A stretch of 64,000 nucleotides of DNA from IMGVR_UViG_3300027573_000779:144934-208933; one strand, 5' to 3'. Shown: positions 14,498 to 61,719, counted from the stretch's first letter. Made by a program: numbers and translations. Notes: a model not told the origin generated them from the sequence alone.

Positions 14498-14519
14498 ATG
14501 CTCAAGCGCCGCAGGGCTT
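14498..14519 (-). repeat. Junction element AAGCCCTGCGGCGCTTGAGCAT (consensus copy)
   Basis: Identical to copies at 33295-33316, 33521-33542 and 39861-39882. Confidence 0.9.
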
Positions 14520-16520
14520 TATGAATTATAATCCCTTTCACAAGACCGACTACAAAACACCTTTTCTTGCATCTCGTTCTTGTTTTTATCGTCCCTGTTA
14601 ATACCATACCTGAATTTAGCAGGTTGGCCGCACCACGCGCACTCACCCTCTGCTTTTTGGCGCACAACGTTAAAACGTCCAAAAGGGTCTCTTGAGATTG
14701 ATACTGTATTCATGTTCTCAATAATAGAGAGTCTTTTTATGTTTGCAAGACTAAATTTGAGAGTGCCCACATTTTGGACATTTGAGCACGTCAACCATTG
14801 TAACCTTAGAAGGAAGGAAACTAAGCGTATCTCCGTCTCTTGCGGGTTTACCATCAAGGCGACCTGTACCATTGACAAGAGCTTTTACCCTTTTTAAGGG
14901 GAACTTTACATCGCCAGCAAATTTTTGTGCCTTGTTTGGTCTTCATGCTTTATGTTACTTTCCGTCAAATTATACAATATTTATGTGTCAACCGCAAATA
15001 TCTTGTGGTCTATGAGTTACCTGTTCGCCATTTTTCGCCACAAGAACCACTGTTACCTGATATTCTTTGCGAGCTTTAAGCTGTTGCGCCGCTTTCTTTT
15101 GCGCCGAATAGGAGGTTTCAGCTTCGACTTCAATTTCCTTGCCACGATAAAAAGCTTTATATATATTCATAAAAGAGATTATACATAGTCTTTTTTATGC
15201 TACAAGCCAAACTTTATACTGCTAGGGCTGTATTCGTCTCAATAGGTGGCATACACTGATTAATCACTTCTAGCAATTCTGACAATTTATTGTCATCTAT
15301 GCCAAGAAATTCCCCTATAATACTTCTCATATCCTTATCTGTTAAAGCCACTTGTGCAATTTTAAGGGTTTCGAGTGCCTCTTCTCTTGTAAATTCTTTT
15401 GTGTTCATTGATTATAAAAATAGCGTATAAGGAGAAGAGCCGCAAGTAAAATTAATATGCTCATTTATTTATTCCTGTTCCTCTTCTGTGTCTTTTTCTT
15501 CCAGTTCATCTTCCAGACGTTCAACAACCTCTGCGAGTGTATCACAACTAGACACAACCCACTCTTGACTTGTCGAAATTGCTGGTTCGCAATGCCCTAA
15601 AGTCCTATACTTGAATTGCTGGTACTCCTGTTGAGACATTGACCGCCGACAAATTTCCTTAAACTCGTTTAATCCTTCCTCTAGTTCAGTGGCGAGTTCT
15701 GCGAGACGTTCCCAATTAGCTTTTGTAATTTTATTCATTGAGTTTCACTGATTTAATTTTAAATTTTTCGTCTGTTCCCTCGTACTTTTTGACTAGTTCT
15801 GCTAGTTTGGTTTGCGCTGGCGCTAGGTCAAGCCATACACCAAACTCCATACAATGGAGCCAGTCACCATCGCCCACGTTATCCACGTTATCATTATAAC
15901 TAGGACACCACTGCACTATGTAATAAACGCTCTTCATGGTTAAAAGATACAATATCTTTTTTAACTGTCAATAGCGGTTATTGTCAATCTTTCTAATCGC
16001 ATTAATCGCTGGTATAATACTTTCTGCACCAAGTTCATATGTAATTGATTCTTCAACAACACACAAAAGAGTCTTGGCTAGTCTAACAGGATGTTCCCCG
16101 TTAGAGGAAAACTTTAGTCTTTCGTCATATGTCAACTTTTTATAAAGCTGTAAAGCTCTCTCTTTTAAAATTTCGCCTGCTTTAACAGACATTTCTTTAA
16201 TAGCAGATTCAAATTCAGCACTACTACGGGCAACTTCTTTAGTATTCATAAAGTATAAAAGATACAATATCTTTTTTAAAAGTCAACACTCAAGCGCCGT
16301 TTACAGTTAATCTGCTAATTTGACTTCGCGCCATACCGTCAAGGCATTCAAAAGCTTTTCCTTGTCTTTCTATTCTAGTTTTTGCGCCATTGATGATATT
16401 AGCTACCTTTTGCGCATTTTCGCGCCCGCCGCAATCCTGAATCAGGTTAAAGTTCCCGTTAGAGAACACCCACTTGCGAAAGCTCCGATTGAAGTTAAAT
16501 AGTGTTTTATTCATATTCTG

Positions 16521-16548
16521 AGAATATAGAATCTTTTTAAAACGTCAA
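16521..16548 (-). promoter_or_regulatory. Leaderless-type promoter TTGACG-N16-TATTCT-N6-ATG
   Basis: ATG at 16514. Confidence 0.75.
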
Positions 16549-16937
16549 TACCTTTTAATTTTTTAGAGTATAACCCGCACCTTTTAAAGCTGTTTCGTGG
16601 TCATAACCTCCCCTATAAGACCCTTCAAGCTCGCTCCAATTCAAAATTTTTCCTTCAGAATCAGCAGCAAAGATGTAAGTTTCAGGACCAGTAAACATTG
16701 CATCAGCCGCAGAAACTACTACATATTCATGCTCTTTAACTTCCATCCCCCCAATGTCTTCAGCATAATCTTTTACTTTAATTGGCGGGTCAAGTTTATA
16801 CAAAACTTTACCCTTAGAGAGAGGTTTAATTAGGGTTGCGTAATTCATATGCTCAGTCGCCGCAAGGGCTTTTTGATTGTTTTTTAAATTGTTTAACTTT
16901 TAAGATTATACAATATCTTTTTAAACCTGCAAGACTT

Positions 16938-17255
16938 TTAAGCACCCGCTAAACTAGCTTTTTCCAGCCAATTAACTTCTGGTTTGTCCTGAAAATGATA
17001 GTCCCGTTCTATATAAAGACCAAACTTTAACTTGATAGACTGTAATTCTTTAAGGCTTATAGTGCCGAATTCGACACAACCCATTCCTAAGTCCGCATAA
17101 CCCCAAGCAACATCGTCATCAGGTTCTAGGTAACAAATAAGCCAAGTCGCCGCTCCCATTGGGTTAAAAAACTTAACAATCGGGCGCATATTATCAGGAC
17201 TAGCTTCCCTAAGTTTTCTGTGAAGTTCTTTAGTTAAGAATTTTTGTCGTGCCAT
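16938..17255 (-). CDS. DUF2958-like protein
   Basis: PIVKFFNPMGAATW...GYADLGMGCVEFGTISLKEL...IERDYHF. Confidence 0.85.
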   Translation of the reverse strand: MARQKFLTKELHRKLREASPDNMRPIVKFFNPMGAATWLICYLEPDDDVAWGYADLGMGCVEFGTISLKELQSIKLKFGLYIERDYHFQDKPEVNWLEKASLAGA

Positions 17256-17261
17256 AGTTTA

Positions 17262-17289
17262 ATTATACAATATCTTTTTTGCGCTGCAA
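17262..17289 (-). promoter_or_regulatory. Leaderless-type promoter TTGCAG-N16-TATAAT-N6-ATG
   Basis: ATG at 17255. Confidence 0.8.
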
Positions 17290-17930
17290 GTTAAATCTCA
17301 GTATAAGCTACTGAAATTGCAGTATTAAGATTTTTGATTGCATCTTCTCTACTAGTGGTGGGATTTACCCTCATATAAAACTGAATTCTGTCTTCTGTAG
17401 GAGGATATTTCTTTTGTGCTTTCTTTTCCGCCGCGTTATGGCTTCCAGCCTGAATTATGCCTATTTCTTCTCCCTTACAATAAACAATATAATTTTTCAT
17501 AGTTAAATTATACGATATCTTTTTTATCTTACAACCGTAAATTCATCCCACCAAAAGAACTTTTTATAGGGAAATCCATCAATATCAAAAGTCGCGCCGT
17601 TAAAGTGTGGTCCTGATAGTTCAGAAGGAGTATGAACAGTTAGAATTTCTCCCTTTTTAAAGGTTCTGCCAGTCGCGCAAACATCCTTTAACATCTCGAT
17701 TTTATAAGTTTTTAAGTTCATCTCTCAAGCACCAAGGGGTTGAACTAACTCCTCATCGTCAAAAAACCAGCAAACATAAAGAGAATTTCTGGCATTAGTG
17801 CAAAAATCGCGCATTTGGACAAACTCAGTTCTTAATAAACTCTGAGTTCTGCCACTGAAACCGCTCGCCAATTGCTAAATCCTTAAACCTCATAAGAAAG
17901 ATTATATATAGTCTTTTTAAAAAGACAAAG

Positions 17931-17956
17931 AAAAAAGCCCCCAAAAGGGGGGCTTT
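17931..17956 (-). terminator. Intrinsic terminator
   Basis: AAAGCCCCC/GGGGGCTTT stem with A-run. Confidence 0.65.
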
Positions 17957-18124
17957 AGCCAATTTATTTGATAGACCTATATAACCCTTCAAAAGGGCCG
18001 GTTGGCGGCACTATCTTTTTAACGACTTTTAGCTACGCCGTATGAATTAGCCAACCCTATCACTTGAAAAGCTTAACAGATTTTTTCCAAAAAGCAACAA
18101 TAAAGCCCTTCGGCGTCTGAGAAT

Positions 18125-18520
18125 TTAAGCTGCAACGGGTTCTGCCACTTCAGTTACAGGAATATTTTCTGTAACGTGCTCAGTCGCAGGCTGTTCGGGA
18201 GCATTGCTCACTCCTGACTTTTCAGCCGCTCGCGCCACCTTTTTGGCCAGTTTTTCAGCCTCTTTAGCCGCCTCTTCCTTGTGTTTATTTTCCCAATAAG
18301 CCTTTTTCGAAGCTGAGATTTTGTCCCTTCCAGCTTGGCTCATCTTACTTCCCTTGGGTCGCCCCTTTCGAGTTTGAGAAGGAGAAGGAAGAAGGCTAGG
18401 AAGAGTTGAGGGAATATTAATTCCACTCATCAACTGATTGTATTCAGACTGCTTTACCGCAATCTCTTCCAGCAACTTTGCCGCTCGCAAGTGAGTTTCG
18501 GGCGTTAACACTATGTTCAT
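18125..18520 (-). CDS. Basic putative DNA-binding / nucleoid-like protein
   Basis: N-terminal coiled coil, AT-hook-like KGRPKGS, and a NUMOD3-like MSQAGRDKISASKKAYW helix. Confidence 0.5.
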   Translation of the reverse strand: MNIVLTPETHLRAAKLLEEIAVKQSEYNQLMSGINIPSTLPSLLPSPSQTRKGRPKGSKMSQAGRDKISASKKAYWENKHKEEAAKEAEKLAKKVARAAEKSGVSNAPEQPATEHVTENIPVTEVAEPVAA

Positions 18521-18649
18521 TTTGTTCTTTCTTTCTTTTTAATTGTTTTTAAAATTTTGTCTTTAACTGACAACACCCATACGTTAACACTACTTTTTAA
18601 ACGTGCAAGACTATTTTTTTTCAATAATCAGTCTTAAGCTAATAACTAA

Positions 18650-19417
18650 TTAAGCTTCAACTAGTTGCGCACTAACTTTTTTCTTATCATAGTGGGCGAA
18701 ATAGTCCGTTTTATACCCGCCTCTTCCCTTCCTTCTAATTAGCTCCCAAGCTTTAGCCGCTTGAGTGCCAGAGGGTTGCACGCCATGAAGCAAGACTGCA
18801 TAATTTTTGTTAGCTTTCCGTGCTAGAGAGTCATCATGGTCAATCTTTAGTCCTAAATCTTTTGCCTCTTTCTCAGAAAAGACAACTTTAACCGATACAA
18901 GCCCATGTTTTTCAATGAGATAGTCAAATTTTCCACCCCTTGAAGCAGTAAGCTTTAGATTATGGGGTATAGACCCTAATCTATTGACCCAAAATGGTAG
19001 AGCTTTGGTGTAGGCATAAAACAGCTTATTGGGGTAGCGCCGAACTACTTCCACCCACGCGTCAAAATAGTCCTGACTGAAAAAGTCGCCTGAACCATGT
19101 ATGCGAATTATGGCATATTTCTTAGAAAAACGTGCAATTTCATTGTCAAGCAACGCGACTATTTGGTTGATTGACTTTCCTTTTACCAAGTCAAAATTGT
19201 TCCATCTGCTATCCCTTGTATTCTGAAAAAGGCTTTCGCCTGAAGCCGCATAACACCTAAATTGAGCGTCGGGTCCTGTTATAATTGGACCGCCAAATCT
19301 AGGAACTTTCGCTAGGCAATCCTTTGCAAAGGGGCAGGACCAACCAGCAGGGAGACTGAATATCTTTGTTTTATCAATCTTGGCGTTACCGTTAGCAAAA
19401 AAGAGTCTGTTATTCAT
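18650..19417 (-). CDS. Gp88-like phage protein (radical-SAM-like fold)
   Basis: FSLPAGWSCP, CYA, RIHGSGDFFS, YAYTK, TASRGG, DHDD motifs. Confidence 0.8.
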   Translation of the reverse strand: MNNRLFFANGNAKIDKTKIFSLPAGWSCPFAKDCLAKVPRFGGPIITGPDAQFRCYAASGESLFQNTRDSRWNNFDLVKGKSINQIVALLDNEIARFSKKYAIIRIHGSGDFFSQDYFDAWVEVVRRYPNKLFYAYTKALPFWVNRLGSIPHNLKLTASRGGKFDYLIEKHGLVSVKVVFSEKEAKDLGLKIDHDDSLARKANKNYAVLLHGVQPSGTQAAKAWELIRRKGRGGYKTDYFAHYDKKKVSAQLVEA

Positions 19418-21924
19418 AAATTGGATTATAAATAATCTTTTTAAAAAAGCAAGCCCCCATTTTTTAGGTGGGGGCCGGGGGGGCAGGGCTACTTATGGGA
19501 GAAGTATTTACATACCAACAGGACTATCAACAGGCACACACTCTCCATAATAATTTAAATTGGGCGTTTGAAACTCAAGGTATCCAACCTTGTAGCGGTA
19601 ATGTTCTTTAGGCTGTTCAAGAGGAACGAATTCTAGGTAAGTAATTTCCTCATATCGTTTTGAGGCCAACTCACAAGCTTGGCACATCAAACCATTTTTG
19701 CGCCCTTTATATTTCTTTGTATCTTGCTCGGAATTAAGTATTTGGAACAAAGACGAATATATTAAAGCGTGTTCAAACTTTTCTTGCGTACTCCAAAAGT
19801 AAGCAAGTGTAGGAGTCAACCAATGCAATTCGCCATTGGTGCCTTCGTGGTTGTAGAAAGAGAAGTATCTTTCTTGAAGTTCGATAGGATTGCTGTCTTC
19901 GATTGCTATTGCAACGTGTAAACCAAAGTTTTGACGATACAACTTTTGCATACGCACTCAAGCGCCGTGGGGCTTATAAAAAAGAAACAGTTTTCCTGAA
20001 CTGTAAATTTTAAAAACTCTGGTGCTTGATTTATATACTCATACTATCAAGGATTTTTCCTAAGTCAACAGGAATAATGGGGGAACAACCTTATTTTTTT
20101 GGACTTTTTTAAGATTTTTTGCTCAATTTTGAGACATTTTAGGGTTTTTTCCTACTCTCAAGCGTCGATGAGCTATTTTATAATTTCAGCTAGAGGCCAA
20201 GTGGTTTCGTCCATTTCATAATTTTTATCTCCTTTTGAGAACCAGAATGTCCCTACTGAGCTACTGCAATTAGTAAAGCCGTGTGCGCGACAAGCATCAA
20301 AGACCGCCTGAACATCCTTGTCTTTATCCCATTTAAGTTCTGTACGTATTGCTGTGTATATTAATTCCCATTCTCCAGCACAAGCAACGACTTTAGAATC
20401 AATTCGAAACTGATTCATTTTGTGGATTTGATAGGCCGCGACTGCAATAACAATACTATCGGGCATTTCAACTAGTTCCATAAAGAAAGTTTACAATCTG
20501 AGGGGCTTTTAGTTTGATAGAATGATTACTTTTGTGTACCTATCTTTGCACAAGTCATTCGCTTCTTCACTTGTAAGACTTTCATCAATCTCTTTTCCTT
20601 TTACACTGACTGCATTGACAAGTTGAACTATCCTATAACGCTTATCCAACAAGTTTTTTTGCAGCGTAACAGTGGTTTGTTTGTTATTCATAAACACAAG
20701 AATACAATATCTTTTTTAACTCTCAAGAACTTTTTGCGCCGCCTCAGAGCATTATTTTAGCTTTTTCTTCCATAGTTAAAACCGCCGCGTGAATACTTTT
20801 AATGTCTTCAAAGTCAAGGAACACATCTGTTTGATTACCTATAATTGTTACTCTATCTGGCCGCACTACAGCAATATTTCCAACATTAATAGGTTCAAAA
20901 ATAGTATTATCCGCCTCTATCAGTTCATCAAGGGTGACGCTTTGAACTACTTGGCCACAAGAGCACAGTTCTACAACTTTTGTTTTTCGTCTAACTAGAA
21001 TAAATTTTGAGGTTCCCACATCTCCTAATACGCGATTGTAACCTATTGAGGACAAACAATTTAGGAGCGCCGTTAAATGTGATTTACTTTTAATTGTAAG
21101 TTGGACCGCATCGTTCATATAGGAGGATTATACAACATCTTTCTATTAAATCAAGGTTTTATGGAGAAATGTTTCGAACTACTATGCATTGCCAAGTAGC
21201 ATGTATGTATTTACATTGTATTTACTTTGTATTTACATCCTTTAACTCTATATTATATTATACCATTGTCAGTTAACGCCTCAATATACGCCTTGGCATA
21301 CACTCTATGCCTTAACCTCAACTCTTTAGTGTCTTCATTGGCAAGCTTTATCCTCAGAGAATTAAGCTTCTGCAAAGAACTTCTAACGCTATCGGTGATA
21401 GTAGAATCGTCAATATCGGGCATGACCTTGTGAGAGTGCTGGCTTAAGCTGTCAATAACTTCAGTCAGCGCCGCAATTATCTCTAAGTTGCTCATAATCA
21501 AAGTCTTATCCTTGGAACAGTCCGTCACTATAAGGTTGATAATCCTTTTTGGCCATTATCTCCTTAACCCTTTCCTCTGTCACTTCGCGCCAACCAACGG
21601 GCAAACATTGATACCATTGACCTTTGAACTTCACAAAGTCGCCAGACGACATAGAACGGACATGTAATTTGCAGAAAAGTGTTGATTCACAACCACTTCC
21701 AGCGTTGAAAGCCGCAAAAATGTCCTCTAAGCCCAAATTGTCATCCCACACACTGGAAAACTCTACAGTTTGCGCCGCACCAAAGGAACGGGGATATTTA
21801 ATTTCAATCATGCACCCATTCTAGCAAGACTTTTTAAAGTTGCAACCCTAAAAGTTTGCCTAAAATGTAGACACCCAAGAAAAAGAATCAATTAAAGTCA
21901 ATAAGAACAGCAATTAAGAGCCAC

Positions 21925-22131
21925 TTAAGACCCATTATCAAGGTAACTTATCAAAACATCATTCTGTGCTTGGTCCTTTACTTGGTCCCAAATTGAGTCA
22001 TGAATTGGCCAAATTACGTTCCGAACTTGGTTCTCAACTTGGTCTGGAGTCTGGCCTTTAATTTGGCTTCTCATATGCCACATTTGGCTTCTGACGTGCT
22101 GTTGCCAAATTTGAACCTTTAAAGCATCCAT
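21925..22131 (-). CDS. QVWD-repeat mini-protein
   Basis: DQVENQVRN...IWDQVKDQ; DNA contains acttggtcccaaa. Confidence 0.75.
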   Translation of the reverse strand: MDALKVQIWQQHVRSQMWHMRSQIKGQTPDQVENQVRNVIWPIHDSIWDQVKDQAQNDVLISYLDNGS

Positions 22132-22287
22132 TCCCTTTAATTAATACTATCAATTAGCTTACCAAGAACAGAATTTTTATATCCACTCTCCGTTGCATCC
22201 ATTACGAGACAGACCAACGGAAAAATTGTAATTGTACACACAATCAGCAAAAAAAGGATAATTATTGCTCTGGCAAAAACTCTCATA

Positions 22288-22503
22288 TTAATCTTTTGTG
22301 TTTATGTTTTCTTCTAAACCCTTAACTATACATTCTGCCCATCGTGCGCCGAACCTCTTGTCATCAAGCTCCTTATCAATTTCCTTTAGAAAGGACTGAA
22401 TGTCTCTGCCTAAACCATCAGGGTAGCCGTCGCCATGCCTATAGACAATGGCTCCAGTTGAATCGTCGCTGTAACAGAAATGAATTGTAGCTCTAGTTGA
22501 CAT
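22288..22503 (-). CDS. MSTR...Y-x-H-x-DGYP family phage protein, possibly truncated
   Basis: MSTRATI...VYRHGDGYP. Confidence 0.5.
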   Translation of the reverse strand: MSTRATIHFCYSDDSTGAIVYRHGDGYPDGLGRDIQSFLKEIDKELDDKRFGARWAECIVKGLEENINTKD

Positions 22504-22509
22504 ATTTGG

Positions 22510-22537
22510 ATTATACGATATCTTTTTAAAACGTCAA
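22510..22537 (-). promoter_or_regulatory. Leaderless-type promoter TTGACG-N16-TATAAT-N6-ATG
   Basis: ATG at 22503; the -35 box overlaps a GGCGCTTGA junction core. Confidence 0.8.
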
Positions 22538-22740
22538 GCGCCCGTTAATGGTTCAAACGTCCTATCTTTAGGCCAACGGGCTAACCTATGGTCGTTAGCG
22601 TATTTTAGCCAAGCTTCTGCTTTTTCTTTATCCTTCCAAATATTCAAGGCAATCTGGCGCATTTCTAGGGCAGTTTGTTCCTCTTGATAATGCCACATAT
22701 CCCTATCATCTGAGGACTTAATGTCACGCCAAGAAATCAT

Positions 22741-22762
22741 ATGCTCAAACGCCGCAGGGCTT
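22741..22762 (-). repeat. Junction element (1 mismatch)
   Basis: Fills the whole gap between the stop at 22762 and the ATG at 22740. Confidence 0.85.
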
Positions 22763-37382: not shown

Positions 37383-37389
37383 AAAAGAA

Positions 37390-48841: not shown

Positions 48842-48897
48842 ATTTTTTTAAGTTGTTCTCTAAATCTGTAGCTATGGTAACAAAACTTTTTGAAATG

Positions 48898-50467: not shown

Positions 50468-50504
50468 CCCAACATTTTAAATAAAATTTTTAAAAATGCA
50501 AGTA

Positions 50505-53696: not shown

Positions 53697-54707
53697 TTAG
53701 TTCAGCACAATCAAAGTAGTGCCGGGAACTAAATTCCTATTAAGACTCTTAGATTGCACAAAAATGTTAAAAGAAGTATGTTTTACTGGGTCAACCTTAA
53801 CTTCATAATCTGGCAGCTTCAAAAAGTCTCTAGCACTGTCGCCAGTATAAACTTTCCCGTTCTTTTTGTCTTCAACACAAATTTGTTTTGTCGCCTGTAT
53901 TGTTTCAGGCTTAGTCAGCATGTAATAAGCACTTCCGATTCTATATGGTTTTTTTGTCCAACCTTCAACAAATTCCTTAATTGCTTTCTTTTGGTGAACA
54001 GAAAGAACCTGATATTCCTTGGGATTAAGTTCAATTAGGTGTTTTTTGACCGCTTTACTGTTAAGATTGGTAGTGTCCACAGTAAACAGCTTCTTCATGC
54101 TTCTAGTTCCAGCGCTACGAGCCGTCATAAAACTTTGGGTGCTCACAGTCATTATATCACCCATTTCTTTAACTCCATCTTTTGAAGCCTCCCAAGTTTG
54201 GATGTTGTCTTTTGGAAAACCAAATCTCAACAGTTCTTTTATTCCGTTTTGATTGGGAACAAAAGCTGCGAAAGTGTAATTCTCCTCCAGTTTTTTAATT
54301 TCCTCAACTAGATAAGCCCCACTTCCTCTACTGTTGTTTTCAAAACCGTCAGTAACACAATAAACAAGGAAAGCATGGTCGCCATAAAGCGTAGCTGTTT
54401 TCCTTAAATCATTGATTGCTCTCAAATTTGCATCGATTAAAGCTGTGTTACCGTATGGTTTGTAATGGCCCTTTATTGAGGGAACCCGCATCACGTCCAT
54501 ATCATATAAAAGACAATTTATGCTAAAATTGTCTGAAAACAAATAAATTGATAGTCTGGTCTCCTGATTCATGTCAACGGATTGTTTGGCAAAGGTTTTA
54601 ATTTGCCCGTCAACGACATTAATAACAGTGTCAGTAAGTCCAGCGCTTTCAATTGAAGAGCTTGCATCAACAACAAGCGCAATGTGGTTAACAAGATTTT
54701 GTATCAT
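53697..54707 (-). CDS. vWA-domain protein
   Basis: VVDASSSI (MIDAS), GNTALIDA, VTDGFENNS. Confidence 0.85.
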   Translation of the reverse strand: MIQNLVNHIALVVDASSSIESAGLTDTVINVVDGQIKTFAKQSVDMNQETRLSIYLFSDNFSINCLLYDMDVMRVPSIKGHYKPYGNTALIDANLRAINDLRKTATLYGDHAFLVYCVTDGFENNSRGSGAYLVEEIKKLEENYTFAAFVPNQNGIKELLRFGFPKDNIQTWEASKDGVKEMGDIMTVSTQSFMTARSAGTRSMKKLFTVDTTNLNSKAVKKHLIELNPKEYQVLSVHQKKAIKEFVEGWTKKPYRIGSAYYMLTKPETIQATKQICVEDKKNGKVYTGDSARDFLKLPDYEVKVDPVKHTSFNIFVQSKSLNRNLVPGTTLIVLN

Positions 54708-55206
54708 TTTCCCATTGTATTAAAACTTTTTAAAAAAACAAGCAAAAAAATTTAGCCAAAATAGCCGTTTTTGCAGATGAATTCATACATTTTTTCATCA
54801 GCGCCGCACTCCAGTTCAAAACAAAAAAAGAAGGTCCTCGCAAGCCTTTTGTGATAGGCATCAATCCAAGTCAGATTTGCCTTTTCCCAAGCTTTCCCTC
54901 GAAAATCAAACTCTGGATGCTTTTGAACGGTTTCTCGTGAAACATGAATATTCACTTAAATTCTGTCCACATTCAAATAAATTGCGATTGATGTTTGTTT
55001 TAGGACATCGCTTAAACTGTCAGACGCAAACTGCTCTCTTAGTTCGGGCGGAATAAAACCTATTTCACTTTCTATAGGCCAAATTGTTCTCCCAACTTTA
55101 GTAAGAATTTCTTGCGATATAGTTATATGTAATTTATTAGCAATTGGGAGCCGAATGTTTTCGCGTATTAAATTATAAACCTGTTGATTGAGTTCAGACA
55201 TTAAAT

Positions 55207-55461
55207 TCATTTAGCAATCTTTCTATAATTTTGCTGCCAAATAGCTTTTGTTATATAAGAGGAGGCTTTTCTTACTTGTCCTTCTTCCATTTCTGGAAAG
55301 CAAGCATGAAGAAGTTCATGAATAAGGGTATTTAAGTAATTTTTAGACAACTGGCGAGGGTCAATTTCAATAAGTTTGTTATCGGGCCAAAACTGACCCC
55401 AAGCTCTTTCGCGTCCAAGCTTTCTCTCTACTATAGGGACTCTTTTTCTGCGCCGCTTCAC
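55207..55461 (-). CDS. Minimal HExxH metallopeptidase-like protein
   Basis: TLIHELLHA...E..V. Confidence 0.6.
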   Translation of the reverse strand: MKRRRKRVPIVERKLGRERAWGQFWPDNKLIEIDPRQLSKNYLNTLIHELLHACFPEMEEGQVRKASSYITKAIWQQNYRKIAK

Positions 55462-56017
55462 ACATAGTTTTACACCTATTTAGATACCTGTCAACTGTTT
55501 GTAACCTTACCGAATCTGAAGTAATTATACCAACCATTGGAAGGCCAGTAAACGAGCCGGTATTTAAACAAACTATACTATTTATCTTTTCTAACGTAGC
55601 CTGATGATTGTGTCCAACTATAACTACTTGATAATCATTATCTTGCGCAAATTTAACAGCGTTCCTCTTAAGTCCAACCTTAGAGAACCAAGAACAAAAT
55701 TGATGACCATGAATAACACACACATTAAAACCATTATTATTCCAGTGATAACTTGGTAATAAATAGTCTTTTAAATAATCTTCGACTCCAGAAAACGCCT
55801 CATGATTGCCAGAAATCAAAATAGCTTTTCCTTTTTGTGCTAAAAATTTTATCTTTTCTAAAAGAGATTTATCATAAGAGGTCATGCGCCCTTTATAATC
55901 TACAATATCTCCATTGACAATTAATTTATCAAAAGAGGAATTTAAAACGCCGCTTATTGCAGACCTGTCACACCATCGATTCCCAAGATGTAAATCAGAT
56001 ATTATTAGCGTTTTCAA
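55379..56017 (-). CDS. Calcineurin-like metallophosphoesterase
   Basis: SDLHLG, NGDIVD, GNHE, HGH, GHNH, NTGS. Confidence 0.88.
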   Translation of the reverse strand: MKTLIISDLHLGNRWCDRSAISGVLNSSFDKLIVNGDIVDYKGRMTSYDKSLLEKIKFLAQKGKAILISGNHEAFSGVEDYLKDYLLPSYHWNNNGFNVCVIHGHQFCSWFSKVGLKRNAVKFAQDNDYQVVIVGHNHQATLEKINSIVCLNTGSFTGLPMVGIITSDSVRLQTVDRYLNRCKTMCEAAQKKSPYSREKAWTRKSLGSVLAR

Positions 56018-56419
56018 ACTTCTTCCAAGTCTCTTCCATTAATAGCCAACTCATGTAGCACAATTTCTTTCATACCTTTTCAACTAATTTTCTTTCCTGT
56101 CTTTGAATTTTTCGCCGGTTCCTTAAAAGCGCTTTCTTCTCTTTCTTGTTTCTGGCCTTTTCCAGAAATTCGGCCTGCGCCTTCCTTCTAATAGCCATCC
56201 TGAACACATCGAAAACTGATATATGATATCTTTGTTGAGTATGCAAAGGTCTAAACTCTATCAAGTCACCCGATTTTAGGCTAACCACTAGAGGTTTATC
56301 TTTGTCTTTGCCAAAAGTGCCGTCCAAAACACCTTTTGTAACCAAAGAAACAACCTTTTCTTTGTGACTAACAATATTATTATCTTTATCCTTAATAGGA
56401 ACTAGATAGCCAAAACGCC

Positions 56420-56632
56420 TCATAAAATACTAGTCTCAATTTGGGCTTCAACTTGGGTCCGAATTTGGCTCAAAAGCCGGTTTCCAGAATACTGAGTTCC
56501 CCAAACTTCTCCTCGAACTTGTCCCTGAACTTGGTTGAAAACTTGACTCACAATCTCATTCTTAACCTTGCCAAGAATTCGCTCAAAAGTGCTGTCCCAA
56601 ATTTGGTTTGGAGATTTTAGGTCATCGGACAT
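56420..56632 (-). CDS. QVWD-family mini-protein
   Basis: NQIWD...SQVFNQVQGQVRGEVWG...SQIRTQVEAQI. Confidence 0.75.
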   Translation of the reverse strand: MSDDLKSPNQIWDSTFERILGKVKNEIVSQVFNQVQGQVRGEVWGTQYSGNRLLSQIRTQVEAQIETSIL

Positions 56633-56719
56633 TTTTAAAGATTTTAAACGAAATTTTTAAAAACACAATAAAAATTTTTGCTATTGACGTTTTAAAAAGA
56701 ATTGATACACTTTTAAAAT

Positions 56720-57046
56720 ATGAAACATTCAAACATTCCAGAGCCTATACCTGATTTGGGACTAAAGGTCCGTTGTCCAATTTGCGAACAGGAAAAAGGC
56801 AAATCAAAACGATTTAAAAACAGCCTAGGCTATGAATTTCATTTCCATAAAATGCACGAAGATGGATACAGCTTGACTCAGGCTCCTCCCGAAACAATGC
56901 ATGTGAAAACTGAAATTAAGATTTTTTCCTATTTCTGTCCTGTTTGCGCTTACCCTCAAGCAACAATTAAAAAGCAATCCAATTGTGAGAAGTGCGGGAC
57001 ACATCAAGTCGCGATTTTAAAAGGTCTACAGGAAAGTCTTCAATAG
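56720..57046 (+). CDS. Zn-finger protein on the opposite strand with its own promoter
   Basis: CPIC...H...H, CPVC...CEKC; TTGACG-N16-TACACT upstream; convergent hairpin at 57064-57094. Confidence 0.6.
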   Translation: MKHSNIPEPIPDLGLKVRCPICEQEKGKSKRFKNSLGYEFHFHKMHEDGYSLTQAPPETMHVKTEIKIFSYFCPVCAYPQATIKKQSNCEKCGTHQVAILKGLQESLQ

Positions 57047-57312
57047 CGTTCAAACGAAGGAGAGGGAAGGGGTCGGTTCCGGCCCCTTTCCCTTTTATAG
57101 TAATAAGATAGGGTTTACAATCCCACTTTGTAGGAAAACGCCCTTTTTTCTTCTAAGCTCGAAATCCCATGCGCCTGAAATTTGATAAGGAATGCTAGTA
57201 AGATAGTTTTTCCCTTCAATTACAAAAAGATTAATGTCTGAAACGCCAGTCGGCAACTGGTGAATTCTAGACTGATAGTTGGTTATATCTCCTGTTACAT
57301 ACATAATATTAT

Positions 57313-58695
57313 TTACACTCCACTAGGTTCTAAAGATACCATTCCAGTGAAATAACTCAATGGTTGAGTATGGGTAGGCCAAAACCCAGTATAATAGTTA
57401 AAGTGTTGGACGTAACCTGTAGCAGTAAAGTATTGAGTTCTATAGGTCACTCCCGTAGCGCCGCCAAAACCAGTAATTACCACCACGTTCATCTTATAAT
57501 TACGATTTGGAACTACCCCTATACAATGAATGTGTATAGTGCCCGTTACATATTGTATTCCGCTAGTAGTGTTTTTTGGCCTACCATATCTAAAAGGAAT
57601 AACATTGTCATCTTCAGTTAGTTGAGTGGGGGCAGTAAAACCGGGATTATTCCACATTAAATTATTACCAATCAAATCAAAATCAATAGCATCAAAAGGA
57701 GATATCCAAGTTATTGCTGAATTAACACCACTGGTTTCTGAAGTTATTTCATTAAAAAAGGCGTTTTCAGCTAAAGGATTACCTATAGTAACAGCAAATT
57801 GTCTATTGTAATAATCATAGGTTAACAAAGGATACAAACTCCTTATCATTTGAAGACATTTACCTGTTTTTTGGGTAGCCGAACCATCAAGACGAATATT
57901 TAACGCTGTTTCAAAATAATAATCGCCGCTTCCGGGCAAGTCTTGGACAAGTACAAAGGTGCTTGGGCTACCATGACTGCTTGTGTCATAAAATGAAACA
58001 CCTATAGTATCGCCAGTATTAGGCACCCAGTTATCATTAAATTGAACCCATTTAGGACCGTTCACTGTCACTTCTCCAACTTGACCCGATTGAGGGCCAT
58101 TTAAAGCATAAACAAGCCAATCGGTCTGGTTAGACCATCCTGACAATTGACGCCCCCAAACAAAGTTTCCTGAAAGGTGTAGTTTGGTTTGAGCGCCAGT
58201 TTCTATCCCTGTAACTATCCCGCTTTGCCAAAGAGTAAAAATATCACCACCAAAGCCGCCGAAACCCCATCCTGTGCAAAAGAAAGCTTGGCCGCTGTTC
58301 CTGTTAAACTTGGTTATTACGCTCTTGGTTTTTCTAGTAGCGCTATCCCCATTCCATTGAGAGCCAAACATAGAAGGGGGAGCGCCCGAATCAAAAGGAT
58401 AAACAAAATCCCCAGTTAAAGCCTCTTCCCAACCAAAACTAGTTAAATCATGAAAATAATCATAAAAAGCCCCAGTGCCGGTAACAGTATAACCGCTAAA
58501 AACTGGGTAAATCCTTGATATTACGCTACTTACAAGTTGCCTATTTAATGTAATTCCGGTTCCTCCCGTAATTGCACTATAATACCCCGAGGCATAACCT
58601 GAAGCAAAAGGAAAGAAGGTATTATAAGGCTGGCCTGTATAATACCCATGAAGAGTGGCCTCAAAGTGTTGCTGCGTCCCGCTTGCGTATGACAT
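57313..58695 (-). CDS. Gly/Thr/aromatic-rich beta protein, probable virion/structural
   Basis: Many SG/TG motifs; GTGTAA element upstream (58706-58711); the next gene 57095..57304 also has GTGTAA-N8. Confidence 0.5.
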   Translation of the reverse strand: MSYASGTQQHFEATLHGYYTGQPYNTFFPFASGYASGYYSAITGGTGITLNRQLVSSVISRIYPVFSGYTVTGTGAFYDYFHDLTSFGWEEALTGDFVYPFDSGAPPSMFGSQWNGDSATRKTKSVITKFNRNSGQAFFCTGWGFGGFGGDIFTLWQSGIVTGIETGAQTKLHLSGNFVWGRQLSGWSNQTDWLVYALNGPQSGQVGEVTVNGPKWVQFNDNWVPNTGDTIGVSFYDTSSHGSPSTFVLVQDLPGSGDYYFETALNIRLDGSATQKTGKCLQMIRSLYPLLTYDYYNRQFAVTIGNPLAENAFFNEITSETSGVNSAITWISPFDAIDFDLIGNNLMWNNPGFTAPTQLTEDDNVIPFRYGRPKNTTSGIQYVTGTIHIHCIGVVPNRNYKMNVVVITGFGGATGVTYRTQYFTATGYVQHFNYYTGFWPTHTQPLSYFTGMVSLEPSGV

Positions 58696-59822
58696 TCATC
58701 ATACATTACACTTTTTTAACTAGTTCTTGGGGGATGTCGAAGGTTTTTACGAAATCTATTATTTCGTGTGAAATTTCAAGAGTATGGCAAATTGGGATAT
58801 AATATTCAGTTTTGTGGGATATCACAGCATCCACCCAAAAAGAAGCAGGAACCATTTTACAATCACTCTGTTCCCTATACTCATCACTTAGTTTTTGAAA
58901 ACGATAGTGCGCGACTTCTATAAACCACTTTTTAACCCTTTTAACTTTGCCTTCAGAATTAGCAAAAGCTAAAGTAGTTTCTTTTTGGCATTTATGTTCC
59001 TCAATAACACCTTGAAGGTAGGATATCTTTTTTTCAATAGTGTCAAAAAAGTCCTCTTTTAAGTGACCTTGTAAGTAAATTTTTCTATTGGTTTTTTTGT
59101 CTGCGTCTTCTACTGTGTCGTAACTAAAACCCCCAAAACTCCAACTGAATAATTCTAAAAAAACCGGAGGCTCGGTCATTACATCCCAAAGCGGACTGTC
59201 GTAAAACCCCTTAGCAAACGCCGCTGCTTTATAGATATTAATTTCCACTGTATTTAGTCTGACAATGACAGTTGTTTTTCTGCGCCAACCAAACTTAAAG
59301 CCATTAAACCATTGTCTTTGTTATTATCCACTAGACTCCGAATTTGCCCCGCAATATCGCCAATCCTTCTTTGTTGTTCGGCAGGTAAGGACGCTATTAT
59401 ACCCTTAATCATGAAAACAGTTTCTTCCTCTTCAGATATAAATTTATTCATTTTTGTTTATCTTCCTCTTGCTGTTTTGTTCACAAACTCCATTAAACAA
59501 ACTCTCGGAGCCACTTTGACCTTAACTGCTTTTGCAATATTAACTATAGAAAAAATAAAAAATATCGTCCCAAGAAATAACATTATAGCCCCCGTTACCA
59601 TCATATCACTCTCATTATAAGATTTTTGCGCCTTCCATTTGAAAAACATCCGCGCCAAAATAAAAGCAACAATAGCAAATAATCCTAGAACTGCCGCTAA
59701 AGAGCTATACTTAATAAGTTCCCAATTTAAAAACTCCTGAACCACCAAGGGGGCTTGTTCTTTGACAAAAACGGTCCCTTCTTGAAGGGTGCTGATAATT
59801 ATTTGATTTAAATTAGTGTCAT

Positions 59823-60197
59823 TCATATACTTTTTGCGACAACCCAAACAGTTTTAATCTCATTTGGTTTGGTTCTAGGAAAAATCTTTTGAACCACTTT
59901 CTGTGCGACAGTAGTTAGACAATGACTAATGTCATGAACAAACCTTGTTTCATTAGTGCTATAAAACCAACATTTATAACCACGACCACAATAACCACGA
60001 CCAGTTACTTGTTTCAATAAGTGTATTTTTTTACCTTTTTTAATTGGTGTTGTTAAAACGGTTACTTTTATTCTTTCAGGTAAATTCTCTTCGGGTTTAG
60101 AAAGTAAAAACCCTACAAACTCGTTACAAAGAGCCTCGCTCCCATGTGAATCCACATAAAAAGCCCCGCTCCAATCCAACTCAAATGTTCTTTGCAT
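59823..60197 (-). CDS. Hypothetical, CxxFV-P paralog family member 4 (start moved to MQRTF)
   Basis: ALCNEFVGFLL...PERIKVTV; promoter lies inside the track's N-terminal extension. Confidence 0.6.
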   Translation of the reverse strand: MQRTFELDWSGAFYVDSHGSEALCNEFVGFLLSKPEENLPERIKVTVLTTPIKKGKKIHLLKQVTGRGYCGRGYKCWFYSTNETRFVHDISHCLTTVAQKVVQKIFPRTKPNEIKTVWVVAKSI

Positions 60198-61719
60198 TTT
60201 TAAAAGGATAACAAAGTTTTTTGAAATGTCAACTCTCAAACGCCGAGGGGTTAATTTTTTGCCGCCTTTATAAAAGAATTAAAAATGCATACCAAAACAC
60301 TATCATGAACTTGGATTTTTGTAGGATTATCTAAAGTTGTGAAATCATCGCAGTATCCATAATAAATTTTACTCCAATCAATTTTCCCCCAAACCTTTTC
60401 GTATATTTTATATTTGATAAAATATTGTTGGTATGTTTGAATTTTATAAAAATCCATTTTACTCAATTATTGTCGCCGTTACTGTTCTTACTATTCTACT
60501 CGGAAGTCTAACAATTCCGGTTGTTTGATTAGTAATGGCATTTTTAAAGCTTGTCCTGTGAATAGGTCCTAGCCCAATAGTATGTTCAGAGCCTTCTATA
60601 CTATTTGACACCGTAATGCTAACAAGAGTCATTTTTTCTACTACAAATGATGCATTGGTTGTTAGAACGTTTGTTATAATAGAGCCAAAAAAAATATTTG
60701 GGTCATAATGCCTGATATTAAAAGAAATCCCATTAGTTGGACCTGAATAATTCCAAGTCATTTCGGTAGGAACATCTTGAGCAGTCGCAGTAAAAACCAT
60801 CAACAATCCAAAAAACTTCTTCATTTAAAAGAAGGATATCAAGCTCTTCTTTAGTCGTCAACAAAATTAGCAATAGTTTTAAAACCTTCATAGTTTATTC
60901 AAAATAAGGCAAAAGCATGAAAATTGTTTGGTACTTTCCAAAAACCTTACCGTGAAAGTAATAACAATCTCCACCTATAGCCGCAAACAGTGCATCTATG
61001 TAATTTGGTTCCTTATCTTCATCAAAAACCAACCAAGTGTCATATTTACACCCCTCCTGAATCCGCCCACCCTGCTCTAAAAGGATTGGTAGGAGAGCTT
61101 CTTTCTTCTTTTTTCCTTCAGGAGTAAGCACCCATTCGCCGGAAACTATTATGCCATATGTCATTTGTTTTTATAAAATTCATCTATTTCAACCCATTCA
61201 GGCACATTGCCTTTCCACCACCATTCGCCAACCCTCTGATGTCTTTCCATTGGCTCAGTAACTAATACTTTCTTAATTGCTGATAAATAATAAGCCGCTT
61301 CGTCATCTAAATAGGTGTCGCCTTCCATCTCTGGATGTGTTGCAGCACAAAAAATCCTCCCATTTTTTCTAATTCTAACAGCCATAACATTTATATTTAA
61401 TTATTTTTTTATGACCATAAATATCTTTGCTACCAATAAATACTTTTGGAAGTTTTATAATCCTGCTATCAGACTGAAACTGGTCAAGCGTGGGGTCAAT
61501 TATAGTTCCATCTTCCATTTCTAGCCAACAATGATGCGCTCTCATCAATTCTCCCTCCACAAGCGAGGTTTTAACGCCTATTGCTGATAAATAGCCCTGA
61601 AGTGGAAAACACATCATAAAACAGAAATTATCCGAAGACCTTCCGTTAAGCATACCCTTTCTGAAAGATGTGACCAACGAACGTAATTTAAATTTGCTTA
61701 TCACAAGCTTTCTTCTCAT

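What the first reader, a model, noticed from the sequence alone, without database searches (positions are those of the whole stretch)
14498..60252. A ~22-bp GC-rich element marks more than 20 gene junctions: cassette-like architecture without an integrase in view
Seen: coding-strand consensus AAGCCCTGCGGCGCTTGAGCAT at about 14498, 16288, 16849, 17722, 19956, 20155, 22741, 23002, 25066, 25106, 25598, 25784, 27801, 31763, 33295, 33521, 36272, 38896, 39359, 39861, 44117, 49093 and 60232. It is always co-oriented with the genes and begins at or overlaps the upstream stop. It is followed either immediately by ATG (14497, 16848, 17721, 22740, 23001, 27800, 33294, 33520, 38895, 39358, 49092) or by the TTGAC -35 box of the next promoter (25598, 31763, 36272, 39861, 44117, 60232). 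It can fold into a small bulged hairpin (AAGC..GCTT) and has no properly spaced Shine-Dalgarno. Inference: either (a) a recombination site delimiting one-gene cassettes that are gained, lost and shuffled, or (b) an RNA signal, such as a processing site releasing leaderless monocistronic mRNAs or a re-initiation element.
Basis: partly seen in the sequence, partly recalled or inferred. Interest (0 to 1): 0.9.

Follow-up and report, generated by a model that had tools for sequence, protein, structure and literature searches.

The report
Repeated junction element in leaderless phage early genes
A 22-base GC-rich sequence really does sit at over 20 gene junctions in the early region of an uncultured 209-kb groundwater phage whose early genes are mostly transcribed without any leader; it is a new variant of the repeated intergenic control elements known from other phages, not an integron-like recombination site, and its molecular reader is still unknown.

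Summary
The window is the last 64 kb of a complete 208,933-bp virus record. A 16-base core of the element, with up to 2 mismatches, occurs 24 times in the genome against 1.4 expected. Of these, 23 lie on the gene strand and 23 in the window. Thirteen copies end 0-5 nt before an ATG, eight end 2-3 nt before a -35 box, and two are followed by neither.

New context: about 50 sigma70-type promoters lie on this strand, and 36 of them put the ATG 4-9 nt after the -10 box. Early genes are therefore leaderless, and Shine-Dalgarno sites are absent.

The hairpin is weak (-5.3 kcal/mol, no better than shuffles) and shows no covariation. What is conserved is primary sequence: RCCYNNCGGC-N4-GAG.

No integrase, Y1 transposase or GIY-YIG gene is present. 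Near-identical strains show no cassette differences. A 203-kb relative has the same leaderless promoters but no element.

My best reading, at confidence 0.35, is that the element is read on the transcript to mark the start of the next unit, by RNA processing or start-site control. I also think its repeats serve as patches for homologous recombination.

The main rivals are a stoperator-like DNA site and a passive PeSL-type remnant. The closest known systems are PeSLs, mycobacteriophage SAS/ESAS and L5 stoperators.

The parts
14498..14519 (-). Element E, exact consensus, overlaps the upstream stop by 1 nt, followed at once by ATG
16288..16309 (-). Degenerate E (3' half with the CGGCGCTTGAG core only), followed 2 nt later by the -35 box of promoter 16286-16259
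16849..16871 (-). E with a 1-nt insertion, followed by ATG; lies at the end of a 5' UTR from promoter 16932-16903
17722..17743 (-). Degenerate E followed by ATG
18103..18124 (+). The only inverted copy; on the - strand it lies directly after the stop of gene 18520-18125 and before a T-rich run
19956..19977 (-). E followed by ATG after 4-5 nt; lies in a 5' UTR from promoter 20068
20155..20176 (-). Degenerate E after the stop of gene 20481-20173; no start or promoter directly after it
22741..22762 (-). E (1 mismatch), stop-E-ATG junction
23002..23023 (-). E, chimeric type (type-A 5' part, type-B 3' part), stop-E-ATG junction
25066..25089 (-). E variant followed by the ATG of a 263-aa DUF6927 gene; lies in a 5' UTR from promoter 25169
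25107..25121 (-). Half copy (5' part only) upstream of E 25066
25598..25619 (-). E subtype A' (GGCTTTGGAG), abuts the -35 box of consensus promoter 25598-25571
25784..25805 (-). E overlapping the last codons and the TGA stop of gene 25994-25788; no ATG or promoter directly after it
27801..27822 (-). E type B (TAACCCCTCGG...GAGAGT) followed by ATG
31763..31784 (-). E (1 mismatch) that supplies the stop of the upstream gene and abuts promoter 31763-31736
33295..33316 (-). E, exact consensus, stop-E-ATG junction
33521..33542 (-). E, exact consensus, stop-E-ATG junction
36272..36293 (-). E type B abutting promoter 36271-36244
36309..36322 (-). Half copy upstream of E 36272
38896..38917 (-). E followed by ATG; the upstream gene is a member of the repeat-protein family
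39359..39380 (-). E type B followed by ATG
39386..39398 (-). Half copy 5 nt upstream of E 39359
39861..39882 (-). E, exact consensus, abutting promoter 39861-39834; part of a roughly 75-nt composite of half copy, T4A7 run, E and promoter
39900..39913 (-). Half copy followed by TTTT (terminator-like) upstream of E 39861
44117..44138 (-). E subtype A' abutting the promoter of rIIB (44117-44090); same composite as at 39861
44154..44168 (-). Half copy followed by TTTT upstream of E 44117
49093..49114 (-). Degenerate E followed by ATG
60232..60253 (-). E type B abutting promoter 60232-60205
13146..60232 (-). Field of about 50 sigma70-type early promoters (TTGAC/TTGCgg, conserved tttAAAAAGatattg spacer, TATAAT); 36 have the ATG 4-9 nt after the -10 box, giving leaderless units

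Best explanation
E is a strand-specific junction module of an early region built from single-gene units that are expressed without a leader.

Shown: 36 early genes have a strong sigma70-type promoter placed so that transcription should start at or next to the A of the ATG. E fills the gap in front of the other units. At 13 sites it ends 0-5 nt before the ATG of a gene with no adjacent promoter. Ten of those follow an upstream gene and three lie at the end of a 35-90 nt 5' UTR. At 8 sites E ends 2-3 nt before a -35 box. What is conserved is a bipartite primary sequence, RCCYNNCGGC-N4-GAG, not a helix.

Inferred: E is read on the read-through transcript by a sequence-specific factor, either an endoribonuclease or an RNA-binding protein, of phage or host origin. 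That factor marks the 5' edge of the next unit. It would cut or remodel the RNA just 3' of the GAG. A promoter-less cistron would then begin at or within a few nt of a 5' end, like its leaderless neighbours, and the upstream message would end just after its stop.

Inferred side effect: the copies offer 22-40 bp of near identity. The phage's RecA-like recombination can use them, which homogenises the copies, makes chimeras and half copies, and can move single-gene units, as proposed for PeSLs.
For: Count, strand bias and junction position.

Tight link to the next start: 13 of 13 are ATG at 0-5 nt, confirmed by independent gene calls. Where a junction has spare bases, they always lie on the upstream side of E.

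Leaderless context: 36 of 50 promoters have the ATG 4-9 nt after the -10 box, with a mode of 6. Early genes have no Shine-Dalgarno site, while late genes do carry AAGGA-type sites. The host can therefore use Shine-Dalgarno sites, yet E offers only GAG at a 2-5 nt spacing.

Sense-strand terminators are no more frequent than in shuffles (20 against 16.4), so long read-through RNAs are expected.

Sequence rather than structure is conserved: invariant C5, G10, G17 and A18, with no covariation. Relics at 16288 and 20155 keep the core and lose the 5' arm.

The same 18-mer followed by 1-2 nt and an ATG lies between two ORFs in three unrelated viral contigs. One of them, L034, also has leaderless promoters and no Shine-Dalgarno sites. 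None of 120 bacterial hits has this layout.

Recombination side: both sequence types occur in both contexts, and chimeras exist. There are half copies. The promoter subtype TTGACATTTTAAAAA is present at 5 of 8 E-linked promoters against 1 of about 42 others. A RecA-like gene is present.
Against: No RNA data exist for this phage, so no end, cut or translational effect has been seen.

No nuclease or RNA-binding protein can be tied to E.

The eight copies that precede promoters are as well conserved as those that precede ATGs, although a start-linked RNA role gives them little to do.

At three of those sites a half copy followed by a T-run precedes E. Transcripts may therefore often stop before reaching it.

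The GAG-to-ATG spacing varies from 2 to 5 nt, so a cut at a fixed distance would not always give a perfect 5' AUG.

The 3' part of E, GCTTGAG, resembles this phage's extended -35 box, GCTTGAC. That hints at a DNA-level origin or reader.

The tight spacing on both sides may simply reflect a compact genome in which E is the whole intergenic region.
Confidence: 0.35

Rival explanations
1. E is a stoperator-like DNA site. A phage-encoded DNA-binding protein binds the asymmetric site. It represses or insulates the 8 promoters that E abuts, and it blocks RNA polymerase running into the 13-15 promoter-less or UTR-linked genes. The result is timed shut-off of a subset of early genes.
For: Layout matches L5 stoperators: more than 20 asymmetric copies, in one orientation relative to transcription, in very short intergenic gaps at stops and starts, with some copies at promoters.

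E contains a -35 look-alike, GCTTGAG.

Primary sequence is conserved without covariation.

Terminator-like half copies placed before E at three promoters make sense if E acts as DNA.

The distant relative has the promoters but not E, as expected for a lineage-specific regulator and site pair.

One HTH_3 gene exists.

Stoperators are cited in PMC3203893; the details given here are from my own knowledge of Brown et al. 1997.
Against: No repressor is identified. None of 104 early proteins hits an HTH family, and the one HTH_3 gene lies about 130 kb away.

There is no integrase or other sign of lysogeny.

E abuts the -35 box rather than overlapping it.

A roadblock needs no fixed distance to the ATG. 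Yet all 13 ATG-linked copies end within 5 nt of the ATG, and all spare bases lie upstream of E.
Confidence: 0.2
2. E is a passive PeSL-type remnant, made of a small stem-loop plus a decayed -35 box. Nothing reads it specifically. It is kept alike by recent spread and gene conversion among the many early promoter cassettes. It matters only as a weak attenuator or 3' hairpin and as a recombination linker.
For: PeSLs in T4-like phages are stem-loops just upstream of near-consensus sigma70 early promoters in ORFan-rich regions. Degraded halves with a stem-loop and a -35 box but no -10 box are described (PMC2839356, PMC4122927).

In this window there are 8 element-plus-promoter composites, a roughly 75-nt composite repeated three times, half copies, chimeras and a -35-like 3' part. 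A RecA-like gene is present.
Against: Homologous exchange between copies keeps existing junctions but cannot create the same exact E|ATG joint 13 times.

The hairpin is weak and no better than shuffles. The simple scan does not call E a sense-strand terminator.

Invariant bases lie outside any helix, including the GAG.

No indel at any E is seen among the available strains.

Similar start-linked copies occur in unrelated phages.
Confidence: 0.2
3. E is a promoter for a non-sigma70 polymerase, with the start near the GAG, giving 5-8 nt leaders. It would stand in tandem with host-type promoters.
For: A roughly 22-bp element is conserved up to a fixed point just before the ATG. It occurs in both orders relative to sigma70 promoters. 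The strongest conservation lies from about -8 to +3 of a putative start.
Against: No phage RNA polymerase gene was found. The T7-type family search found nothing, although its control set also gave no hit. The large unassigned proteins that were checked gave no polymerase hit.

The only phage sigma factor has region 2 alone and sits with the packaging genes. A different motif, TGTGTAA, precedes late genes.

E has no -10 or -35 geometry.
Confidence: 0.05
4. E is the recombination site of an integron-like, site-specific cassette system.
For: One-gene units in one orientation are separated by a conserved imperfect palindrome.
Against: The complete genome has no tyrosine integrase, Y1 transposase or GIY-YIG gene.

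E is 22 nt long and lacks the attC layout.

There is no cassette variation among strains.

Many units carry their own promoter.
Confidence: 0.02

Closest known systems
PeSLs (promoter-early stem-loops) of T4-like phages RB49/phi1, T4/PST and KVP40/nt-1 (PMC2839356, PMC4122927)
   Same: Both involve dozens of near-consensus sigma70 early promoters with a conserved A/T-rich spacer, in an ORFan-rich early region. A small GC-rich stem-loop lies just upstream of the -35 box. Degraded halves and slipped copies occur. The repeats are candidates for homologous recombination that moves single-gene units.
   Different: This phage looks siphovirus-like (J-type tail protein, giant tape measure), not T4-like. 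The units here are leaderless, with no Shine-Dalgarno site. More than half of the copies have no promoter and abut an ATG. The hairpin is weak and not terminator-like. Primary sequence outside the helix is invariant. No indels at the element could be shown.
Start-associated sequences (SAS/ESAS) of Cluster K mycobacteriophages (PMC3203893, PMC12699233)
   Same: Both are short asymmetric repeats, 11-19 or more copies per genome, found only in the non-structural part. They lie a few bp upstream of start codons that are nearly all ATG, sometimes containing the upstream stop. They have one orientation plus a single inverted copy not linked to a start. They have associated imperfect inverted repeats without RNA covariation. 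The function is still unproven.
   Different: The sequence is different. SAS contains a full AGGAG Shine-Dalgarno core at normal spacing, whereas E has only GAG or GGAG at 2-5 nt. A third of E copies precede promoters, not start codons. The host context here is leaderless.
Stoperators of mycobacteriophage L5 and Cluster A (mentioned in PMC3203893; details from my own knowledge)
   Same: Both have more than 20 asymmetric sites in one orientation relative to transcription, in tiny intergenic gaps at stops and starts, with copies at an early promoter. In both, the site sequence includes a -35-like hexamer.
   Different: Stoperators are bound by a known prophage repressor in a temperate phage. Here no repressor, integrase or lysogeny module is seen, and E lies beside the -35 box rather than over it.
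RNase III processing sites between T7 early genes, and tRNA punctuation of mitochondrial transcripts (my own knowledge)
   Same: In both, conserved intercistronic signals cut a polycistronic RNA into single-gene messages. In mitochondria the products are leaderless.
   Different: E is far too short for RNase III and is not tRNA-like. No cleavage has been observed.
Integron attC sites
   Same: Imperfect palindromes lie between co-oriented single-gene units.
   Different: There is no integrase. E is 22 nt against 55-140 nt for attC. It has no R/L box layout, and many units have their own promoter.

Membership tests
PeSL (T4-like promoter-early stem-loop) | Near-consensus sigma70 early promoter as part of the repeat | tested here: inconclusive
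   8 of 24 copies abut such a promoter. 13 have no -10 box at all and abut an ATG.
PeSL (T4-like promoter-early stem-loop) | Stable stem-loop just upstream of the -35 box that acts as a terminator or attenuator | tested here: not met
   Folding gives -5.3 kcal/mol with a z-score of about 0. There is no covariation. E is not called as a sense-strand terminator. Termination itself cannot be tested here.
PeSL (T4-like promoter-early stem-loop) | Located in ORFan-rich hyperplastic early regions | tested here: met
   All copies but one lie in the 46-kb block of small early genes.
PeSL (T4-like promoter-early stem-loop) | Indels or replacements between close relatives with breakpoints at the repeat | tested here: inconclusive
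   Available strains are 99.8-99.995% identical and have no such indel. The only other relative is too distant and lacks E.
SAS of Cluster K mycobacteriophages | Asymmetric repeat 3-7 bp upstream of start codons, ATG-biased, one orientation, non-structural region only | tested here: met
   13 copies end 0-5 nt before an ATG. 23 of 24 copies share one orientation. Copies occur in early regions only. However, 8 copies precede promoters instead.
SAS of Cluster K mycobacteriophages | Consensus GGGATAGGAGCCC with an AGGAG Shine-Dalgarno core | tested here: not met
   The E consensus is unrelated and carries only GAG or GGAG at a 2-5 nt spacing.
L5-type stoperator | Many asymmetric sites in one orientation in short intergenic gaps, plus a copy at the early promoter | tested here: met
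   E abuts the -35 box but does not overlap it.
L5-type stoperator | Cognate repressor that binds the site, in a temperate phage | not testable with these tools
   No HTH family is found among 104 early proteins. One HTH_3 gene lies elsewhere. There is no integrase. Binding cannot be tested.
Integron cassette array | Tyrosine integrase (IntI) with attI next to the array | tested here: not met
   No Phage_integrase match in the complete genome, while the control rang in 14 of 14 genomes.
Integron cassette array | attC sites of 55-140 bp with paired R/L boxes | tested here: not met
   The element is 22 nt with a 7-bp bulged stem at most.
REP/RAYT or IS200/IS605-type hairpin elements | Y1 (HUH) transposase in the genome, or many copies in a host genome | tested here: not met
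   No Y1_Tnp match. 120 bacterial hits are single, and 114 of them lie in coding sequence.

The most novel reading that the evidence does not exclude
E is a punctuation mark. A sequence-specific endoribonuclease, possibly guided by the antisense copy carried in the 3' UTR of gene 18520-18125, cuts read-through early RNA just before the ATG. Promoter-less cistrons thereby become leaderless mRNAs. This would be a phage counterpart of mitochondrial tRNA punctuation. The same mark is used sporadically by unrelated phages that also rely on leaderless early genes.
Probability: 0.2. Interest if true: 0.85.

Novelty: new variant of a known kind. Interest (0 to 1): 0.6.

Why it matters
Repeated, start-linked intergenic motifs in phages (SAS/ESAS, PeSLs, stoperators) are known, but SAS remains unexplained after 15 years.

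This genome offers an unusually clean case. Its early region is almost entirely made of leaderless single-gene units, about 36 in total. One extra element appears exactly where a unit lacks a transcription start at its ATG.

If the element creates or mimics a 5' end, it would show how a phage solves internal initiation in a leaderless expression regime. It would also give a compact 22-nt part for building polycistronic constructs in such hosts.

If it is a DNA roadblock site, it would extend stoperator-type control to a large, apparently lytic phage.

Either way it marks the unit boundaries along which this ORFan-rich region is likely to be reshuffled.

Tried and rejected
- **Close relatives for indel mapping.** There was no megablast match in INPHARED. 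The best rIIA identity there is 36%. IMG/VR gave only one 38%-identity relative. DUF932 and DUF6927 homologues are at most 59% identical and widespread. The exact-protein look-up returned only near-identical assemblies. Metagenome and viral DNA pattern scans returned the phage's own contig plus unrelated, mostly coding, chance hits.
- **Reads.** No RNA run could be listed. Contigs from three DNA runs laid on 34001-40000 gave only cross-mapping between copies of the element and the promoter repeats.
- **RNA structure.** Folding, shuffles and covariation counts gave no support. Rfam gave nothing at the element, either in the window or in look-alike loci.
- **Bacterial repeat family or host clue.** The genome-collection scan gave single, mostly coding hits.
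- **Known readers in the genome.** No integrase, Y1 transposase, GIY-YIG, NusG/RfaH-like or T7-type polymerase was found. The large unassigned proteins that were checked matched no polymerase family, and the three of them searched against PDB sequences gave no match.
- **Ideas considered and dropped on sequence grounds.** These were sigma54, sigma32, sigma28 or ECF promoters (wrong spacing); a MotA-box-type middle promoter (no -10 box); boxA/boxB and RfaH ops (only a loose resemblance); a Shine-Dalgarno site (3-4 nt of pairing at too short a spacing); pairing with conserved 16S segments recalled from memory (nothing convincing, no sequence checked); DNA uptake sequences; a CRISPR-repeat mimic; and a duplicated gene flank. 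On the last point, the flanking genes are unrelated, and only 5 of 22 upstream genes belong to the repeat-protein family.
- **Literature search by sequence.** It found only unrelated primers.

Full report
**What the window is**

The window is bases 144,934-208,933 of a single 208,933-bp virus record with 37% G+C, rated complete. The DNA comes from groundwater and freshwater-sediment metagenomes. The genome encodes:
- rIIA and rIIB, an RNA ligase and a DUF932 protein;
- a lambda-J-like tail protein and a family B-type DNA polymerase;
- a 5,468-aa tape-measure-like protein;
- a terminase;
- a RecA-like protein;
- a sigma factor with region 2 only.

Nothing in the phage record collection is close. 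Megablast found nothing, and the best rIIA identity is 36%.

Yes.
- The 22-mer with up to 3 mismatches occurs 10 times, all on the - strand, against none expected.
- A 16-base core with up to 2 mismatches occurs 24 times in the genome. Of these, 23 are on the - strand and 23 are in the window. Simulated genomes give a mean of 1.4 and a maximum of 4.
The site at 25106 is only the 5' half.

I add four further half copies, one inverted copy at 18103-18124, and one copy outside the window at genome 24060-24081.

The contexts break down as follows:
- 13 copies end 0-5 nt before an ATG. Independent gene calls on near-identical contigs use the same ATGs.
- 8 copies end 2-3 nt before a TTGAC -35 box.
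- 2 copies (20155, 25784) are followed by neither.

About ten copies touch or overlap the upstream stop codon. In two cases the TGA inside the element is itself the stop of the upstream gene.

The - strand of the window holds about 50 matches to one promoter family. The family has TTGAC or TTGCgg as the -35 box, usually preceded by GC. It also has a conserved tttAAAAAGatattg spacer and TATAAT as the -10 box.

In 36 of these promoters an ATG that opens an ORF begins 4-9 nt after the -10 hexamer, and in 18 it begins exactly 6 nt after. A sigma70 start lies about 7 nt after the -10 box; this is established knowledge. These genes should therefore be transcribed from the A of the ATG, which makes them leaderless.

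Early genes have no Shine-Dalgarno site. Late genes do carry AAGGA-type sites behind a different motif, TGTGTAA. The host can therefore use Shine-Dalgarno sites, and the early design is deliberate.

A 202,704-bp relative (rIIA 38% identical) has the same leaderless promoter family, with eight copies in 22 kb. It has no copy of the element beyond the control level. The promoter system is therefore old, and the element is a lineage-specific addition.

**Anatomy of the element**

An alignment of 22 copies was made.
- Invariant positions: C5, G10, G17 and A18.
- Nearly invariant positions: A2, C4, C9, G11, C12 and G19.
- This gives the pattern RCCYNNCGGC-N4-GAG.

The predicted hairpin is a 7-bp stem with one bulge and a 3-nt loop. 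It folds at -5.3 kcal/mol, no better than shuffled sequence.

On the alignment, 79.9% of cells pair, against 80.3% in column shuffles. Only two pairs change on both sides, against 1.8 expected. The variable N4 segment is the 3' strand of the outer stem, and it changes without compensation. The relics at 16288 and 20155 keep the 3' core and lose the 5' arm.

So primary sequence is under constraint, not a helix. The 3' part, GCTTGAG, resembles this phage's extended -35 box, GCTTGAC.

Two sequence types exist: A (AAGCCCTG...GAGCAT) and B (TARCCCCT...GAGAGT). Both occur before ATGs and before promoters, and chimeras exist, for example at 23002.

The copies before promoters go with one promoter subtype. 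TTGACATTTTAAAAA is found at 5 of 8 E-linked promoters and at only 1 of about 42 others. A roughly 75-nt composite occurs three times. It consists of a half copy, a T4A7 run, the element and a promoter.

The simple scan does not call the element a sense-strand terminator. Terminator-like sites in the region are no more frequent than in shuffles, 20 against 16.4.

- The complete genome has no tyrosine integrase, Y1 transposase or GIY-YIG endonuclease. The controls for all three searches rang.
- Three other assemblies of the phage are 99.8-99.995% identical over 7-20 kb. They differ only in the copy number of a 12-nt tandem repeat.
- Contigs of three runs laid on 34001-40000 gave only cross-mapping between repeat copies.
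- Pattern scans of viral and metagenome collections found no second genome rich in the element.

An integron-like system is therefore not supported. Recombination through homology, as proposed for PeSLs (PMC2839356, PMC4122927), remains plausible. It rests on the chimeras, the half copies, the repeated composite and the RecA-like gene.

Exchange between copies preserves existing joints. It cannot by itself make the same element|ATG joint 13 times. Some function must therefore hold the element at unit starts.

**Tests of the second reading (RNA signal)**

No RNA run could be listed. Rfam gives nothing at the element.

The hairpin lacks support, as described above. What does fit is position.
- All 13 linked starts are ATG, at 0-5 nt.
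- When a junction has spare bases, they always lie upstream of the element. The cases are 15, 56 and 67 nt, or a whole 5' UTR behind promoters 16932, 20068 and 25169.
- The spare bases have plausible histories, such as an inserted promoter, a half copy or a gene remnant. I therefore treat this as modest evidence.

The same 18-mer followed by 1-2 nt and an ATG lies between two ORFs in three unrelated viral contigs with 39-61% G+C (L026, L034, L042).
- L034 also has five leaderless-type promoters in 10.7 kb and no Shine-Dalgarno sites.
- The flanking proteins are unrelated to each other and to this phage's proteins.
- Among 120 bacterial hits, 114 lie in coding sequence and none has this layout.
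- A reversed control pattern gave 8 viral loci against 33 for the real pattern.

This suggests a reader that is not private to this phage, but the numbers are small.

**Mechanism**

I commit, at 0.35, to a transcript-level start mark. Terminators are scarce, so read-through RNAs should cross many units. A cistron whose ATG is internal to such an RNA has no Shine-Dalgarno site and no 5' end.

I propose that a sequence-specific factor reads the element and cuts or remodels the RNA just 3' of the GAG. The next cistron would then start at or near a 5' end, and the upstream message would end just after its stop.

What is shown: counts, strand, positions, leaderless promoter geometry, and sequence rather than structure conservation. 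What is inferred: that the element is read as RNA, the cut, and the factor.

Weak points:
- The eight promoter-linked copies are equally well conserved.
- Three of those sit behind terminator-like half copies.
- The element contains a -35 look-alike.

These weak points favour the main rival, a stoperator-like DNA site for a shut-off protein (0.2). That rival has a strong precedent in phage L5, but here there is no repressor, no lysogeny module, and no reason for a fixed distance to the ATG.

The remaining rivals are:
- a passive PeSL-type remnant (0.2);
- a promoter for another polymerase (0.05), for which no polymerase was found;
- an integron-like site (0.02).

**Comparison with known systems**

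In architecture, the eight element-plus-promoter composites are PeSL-like. Membership fails on the terminator-grade stem-loop, and the indel criterion could not be tested.

In position and copy pattern, the 13 ATG-linked copies behave like the SAS of Cluster K mycobacteriophages. They even share the feature of a single inverted copy not tied to a gene start. The sequence is unrelated, however, and there is no real Shine-Dalgarno core (PMC3203893). The function of SAS is itself still unverified (PMC12699233).

As dispersed, oriented sites that contain a -35-like hexamer, the copies also resemble stoperators.

I file the element as a new variant of this general kind of phage intergenic control repeat, in a leaderless setting that none of the three described systems has.

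**Verdict**

I rate the novelty as a new variant of a known kind and the interest at 0.6.

The most novel reading not excluded is RNA punctuation that manufactures leaderless mRNAs, possibly helped by the antisense copy at 18103-18124. That copy can pair with every site at -25 to -32 kcal/mol. I give this reading a probability of 0.2.

Noticed in passing
window 13146-60232, - strand: About 50 copies of one sigma70-type promoter family with a conserved A/T-rich spacer. In 36 of them the ATG starts 4-9 nt (mode 6) after the -10 box, so nearly every small early gene is a leaderless single-gene unit. The same family occurs in the distant 203-kb relative (L126).
   Followed up: yes
window 40613-40344, 40351-40142, 40127-39894, 39602-39396, 39102-38914, 37243-37019, 34259-34035, 34028-33834, 49297-49112, 44347-44165 and others, - strand: A family of about 20 small proteins (60-90 aa) built from repeats of the type (W/I)(D/E/G)Q(V/I). 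At the DNA level this is seen as gggaccaagtt-like repeats. Five members lie directly upstream of an element copy.
   Followed up: partly
window 37025-37171: A 12-nt tandem repeat inside a member of that protein family. Its copy number differs between otherwise 99.8-99.99% identical assemblies.
   Followed up: partly
L026:626-705, L034:1640-1657, L042:8013-8030 (also L024, L028, L037): The 18-mer AGCCCNNCGGCGCTTGAG lies between two ORFs, 1-2 nt before the ATG, in unrelated IMG/VR contigs with 39-61% G+C. L034 also has leaderless-type promoters and no Shine-Dalgarno sites. None of 120 bacterial hits shows this layout. In L037 two inverted copies simply form a long palindrome.
   Followed up: partly
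window 18103-18124 (+): The single inverted copy sits in the 3' UTR of gene 18520-18125. Its transcript would be complementary to all element copies (-25 to -32 kcal/mol). Cluster K mycobacteriophages likewise have a single inverted SAS copy.
   Followed up: partly
genome 115243-131649 (L007:1243-17649), + strand: A 5,468-aa ORF with an N-terminal phage minor-tail (tape-measure) domain, weak zincin HEXXH-type hits and a weak sigma70 region 4-like stretch. Its C-terminal 2,768 aa match no Pfam family and no PDB sequence.
   Followed up: partly
window 35133-36128, 40751-41488, 30660-31157 and neighbours, - strand: An RNA-repair-like gene set in the early region: an RNA ligase with a PHA02142 OB domain, RlaP, a cyclic-phosphate-processing receiver domain and a Macro domain. 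The region also holds an ArdC-like anti-restriction protein and one HNH endonuclease.
   Followed up: no
genome 69522, 82082, 92970, 93349, 97169, 115216 (+) and others: The motif TGTGTAA(A/T)A lies 9-33 nt upstream of late genes, whose short leaders carry AAGGA-type Shine-Dalgarno sites. It is a candidate late promoter for the phage sigma factor with region 2 only (L127:11462-12163, -).
   Followed up: partly
window 43177-46666, - strand: rIIA and rIIB lie in a genome whose tail genes look siphovirus-like (J-type central fibre, tape measure). The best rIIA relatives in named phages are roughly 150-kb roseophage-type siphoviruses, at about 30% identity.
   Followed up: partly
window 4761-6857 (+) and genome 179-2848 (-): Two large subtilisin-family (S8) proteases are encoded by the phage. 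One carries Ig-like domains.
   Followed up: no
window 2000-9400, + strand: A block of about 20 small genes on the opposite strand, diverging from the main early block. It has its own promoters of the same family (for example at 2048 and 7073) and no element copies.
   Followed up: no
L023:3828-3884, 4594-4670, 5707-5771: An unrelated viral contig, fetched by chance, carries two type II hammerhead ribozymes and a twister-P5 ribozyme.
   Followed up: no
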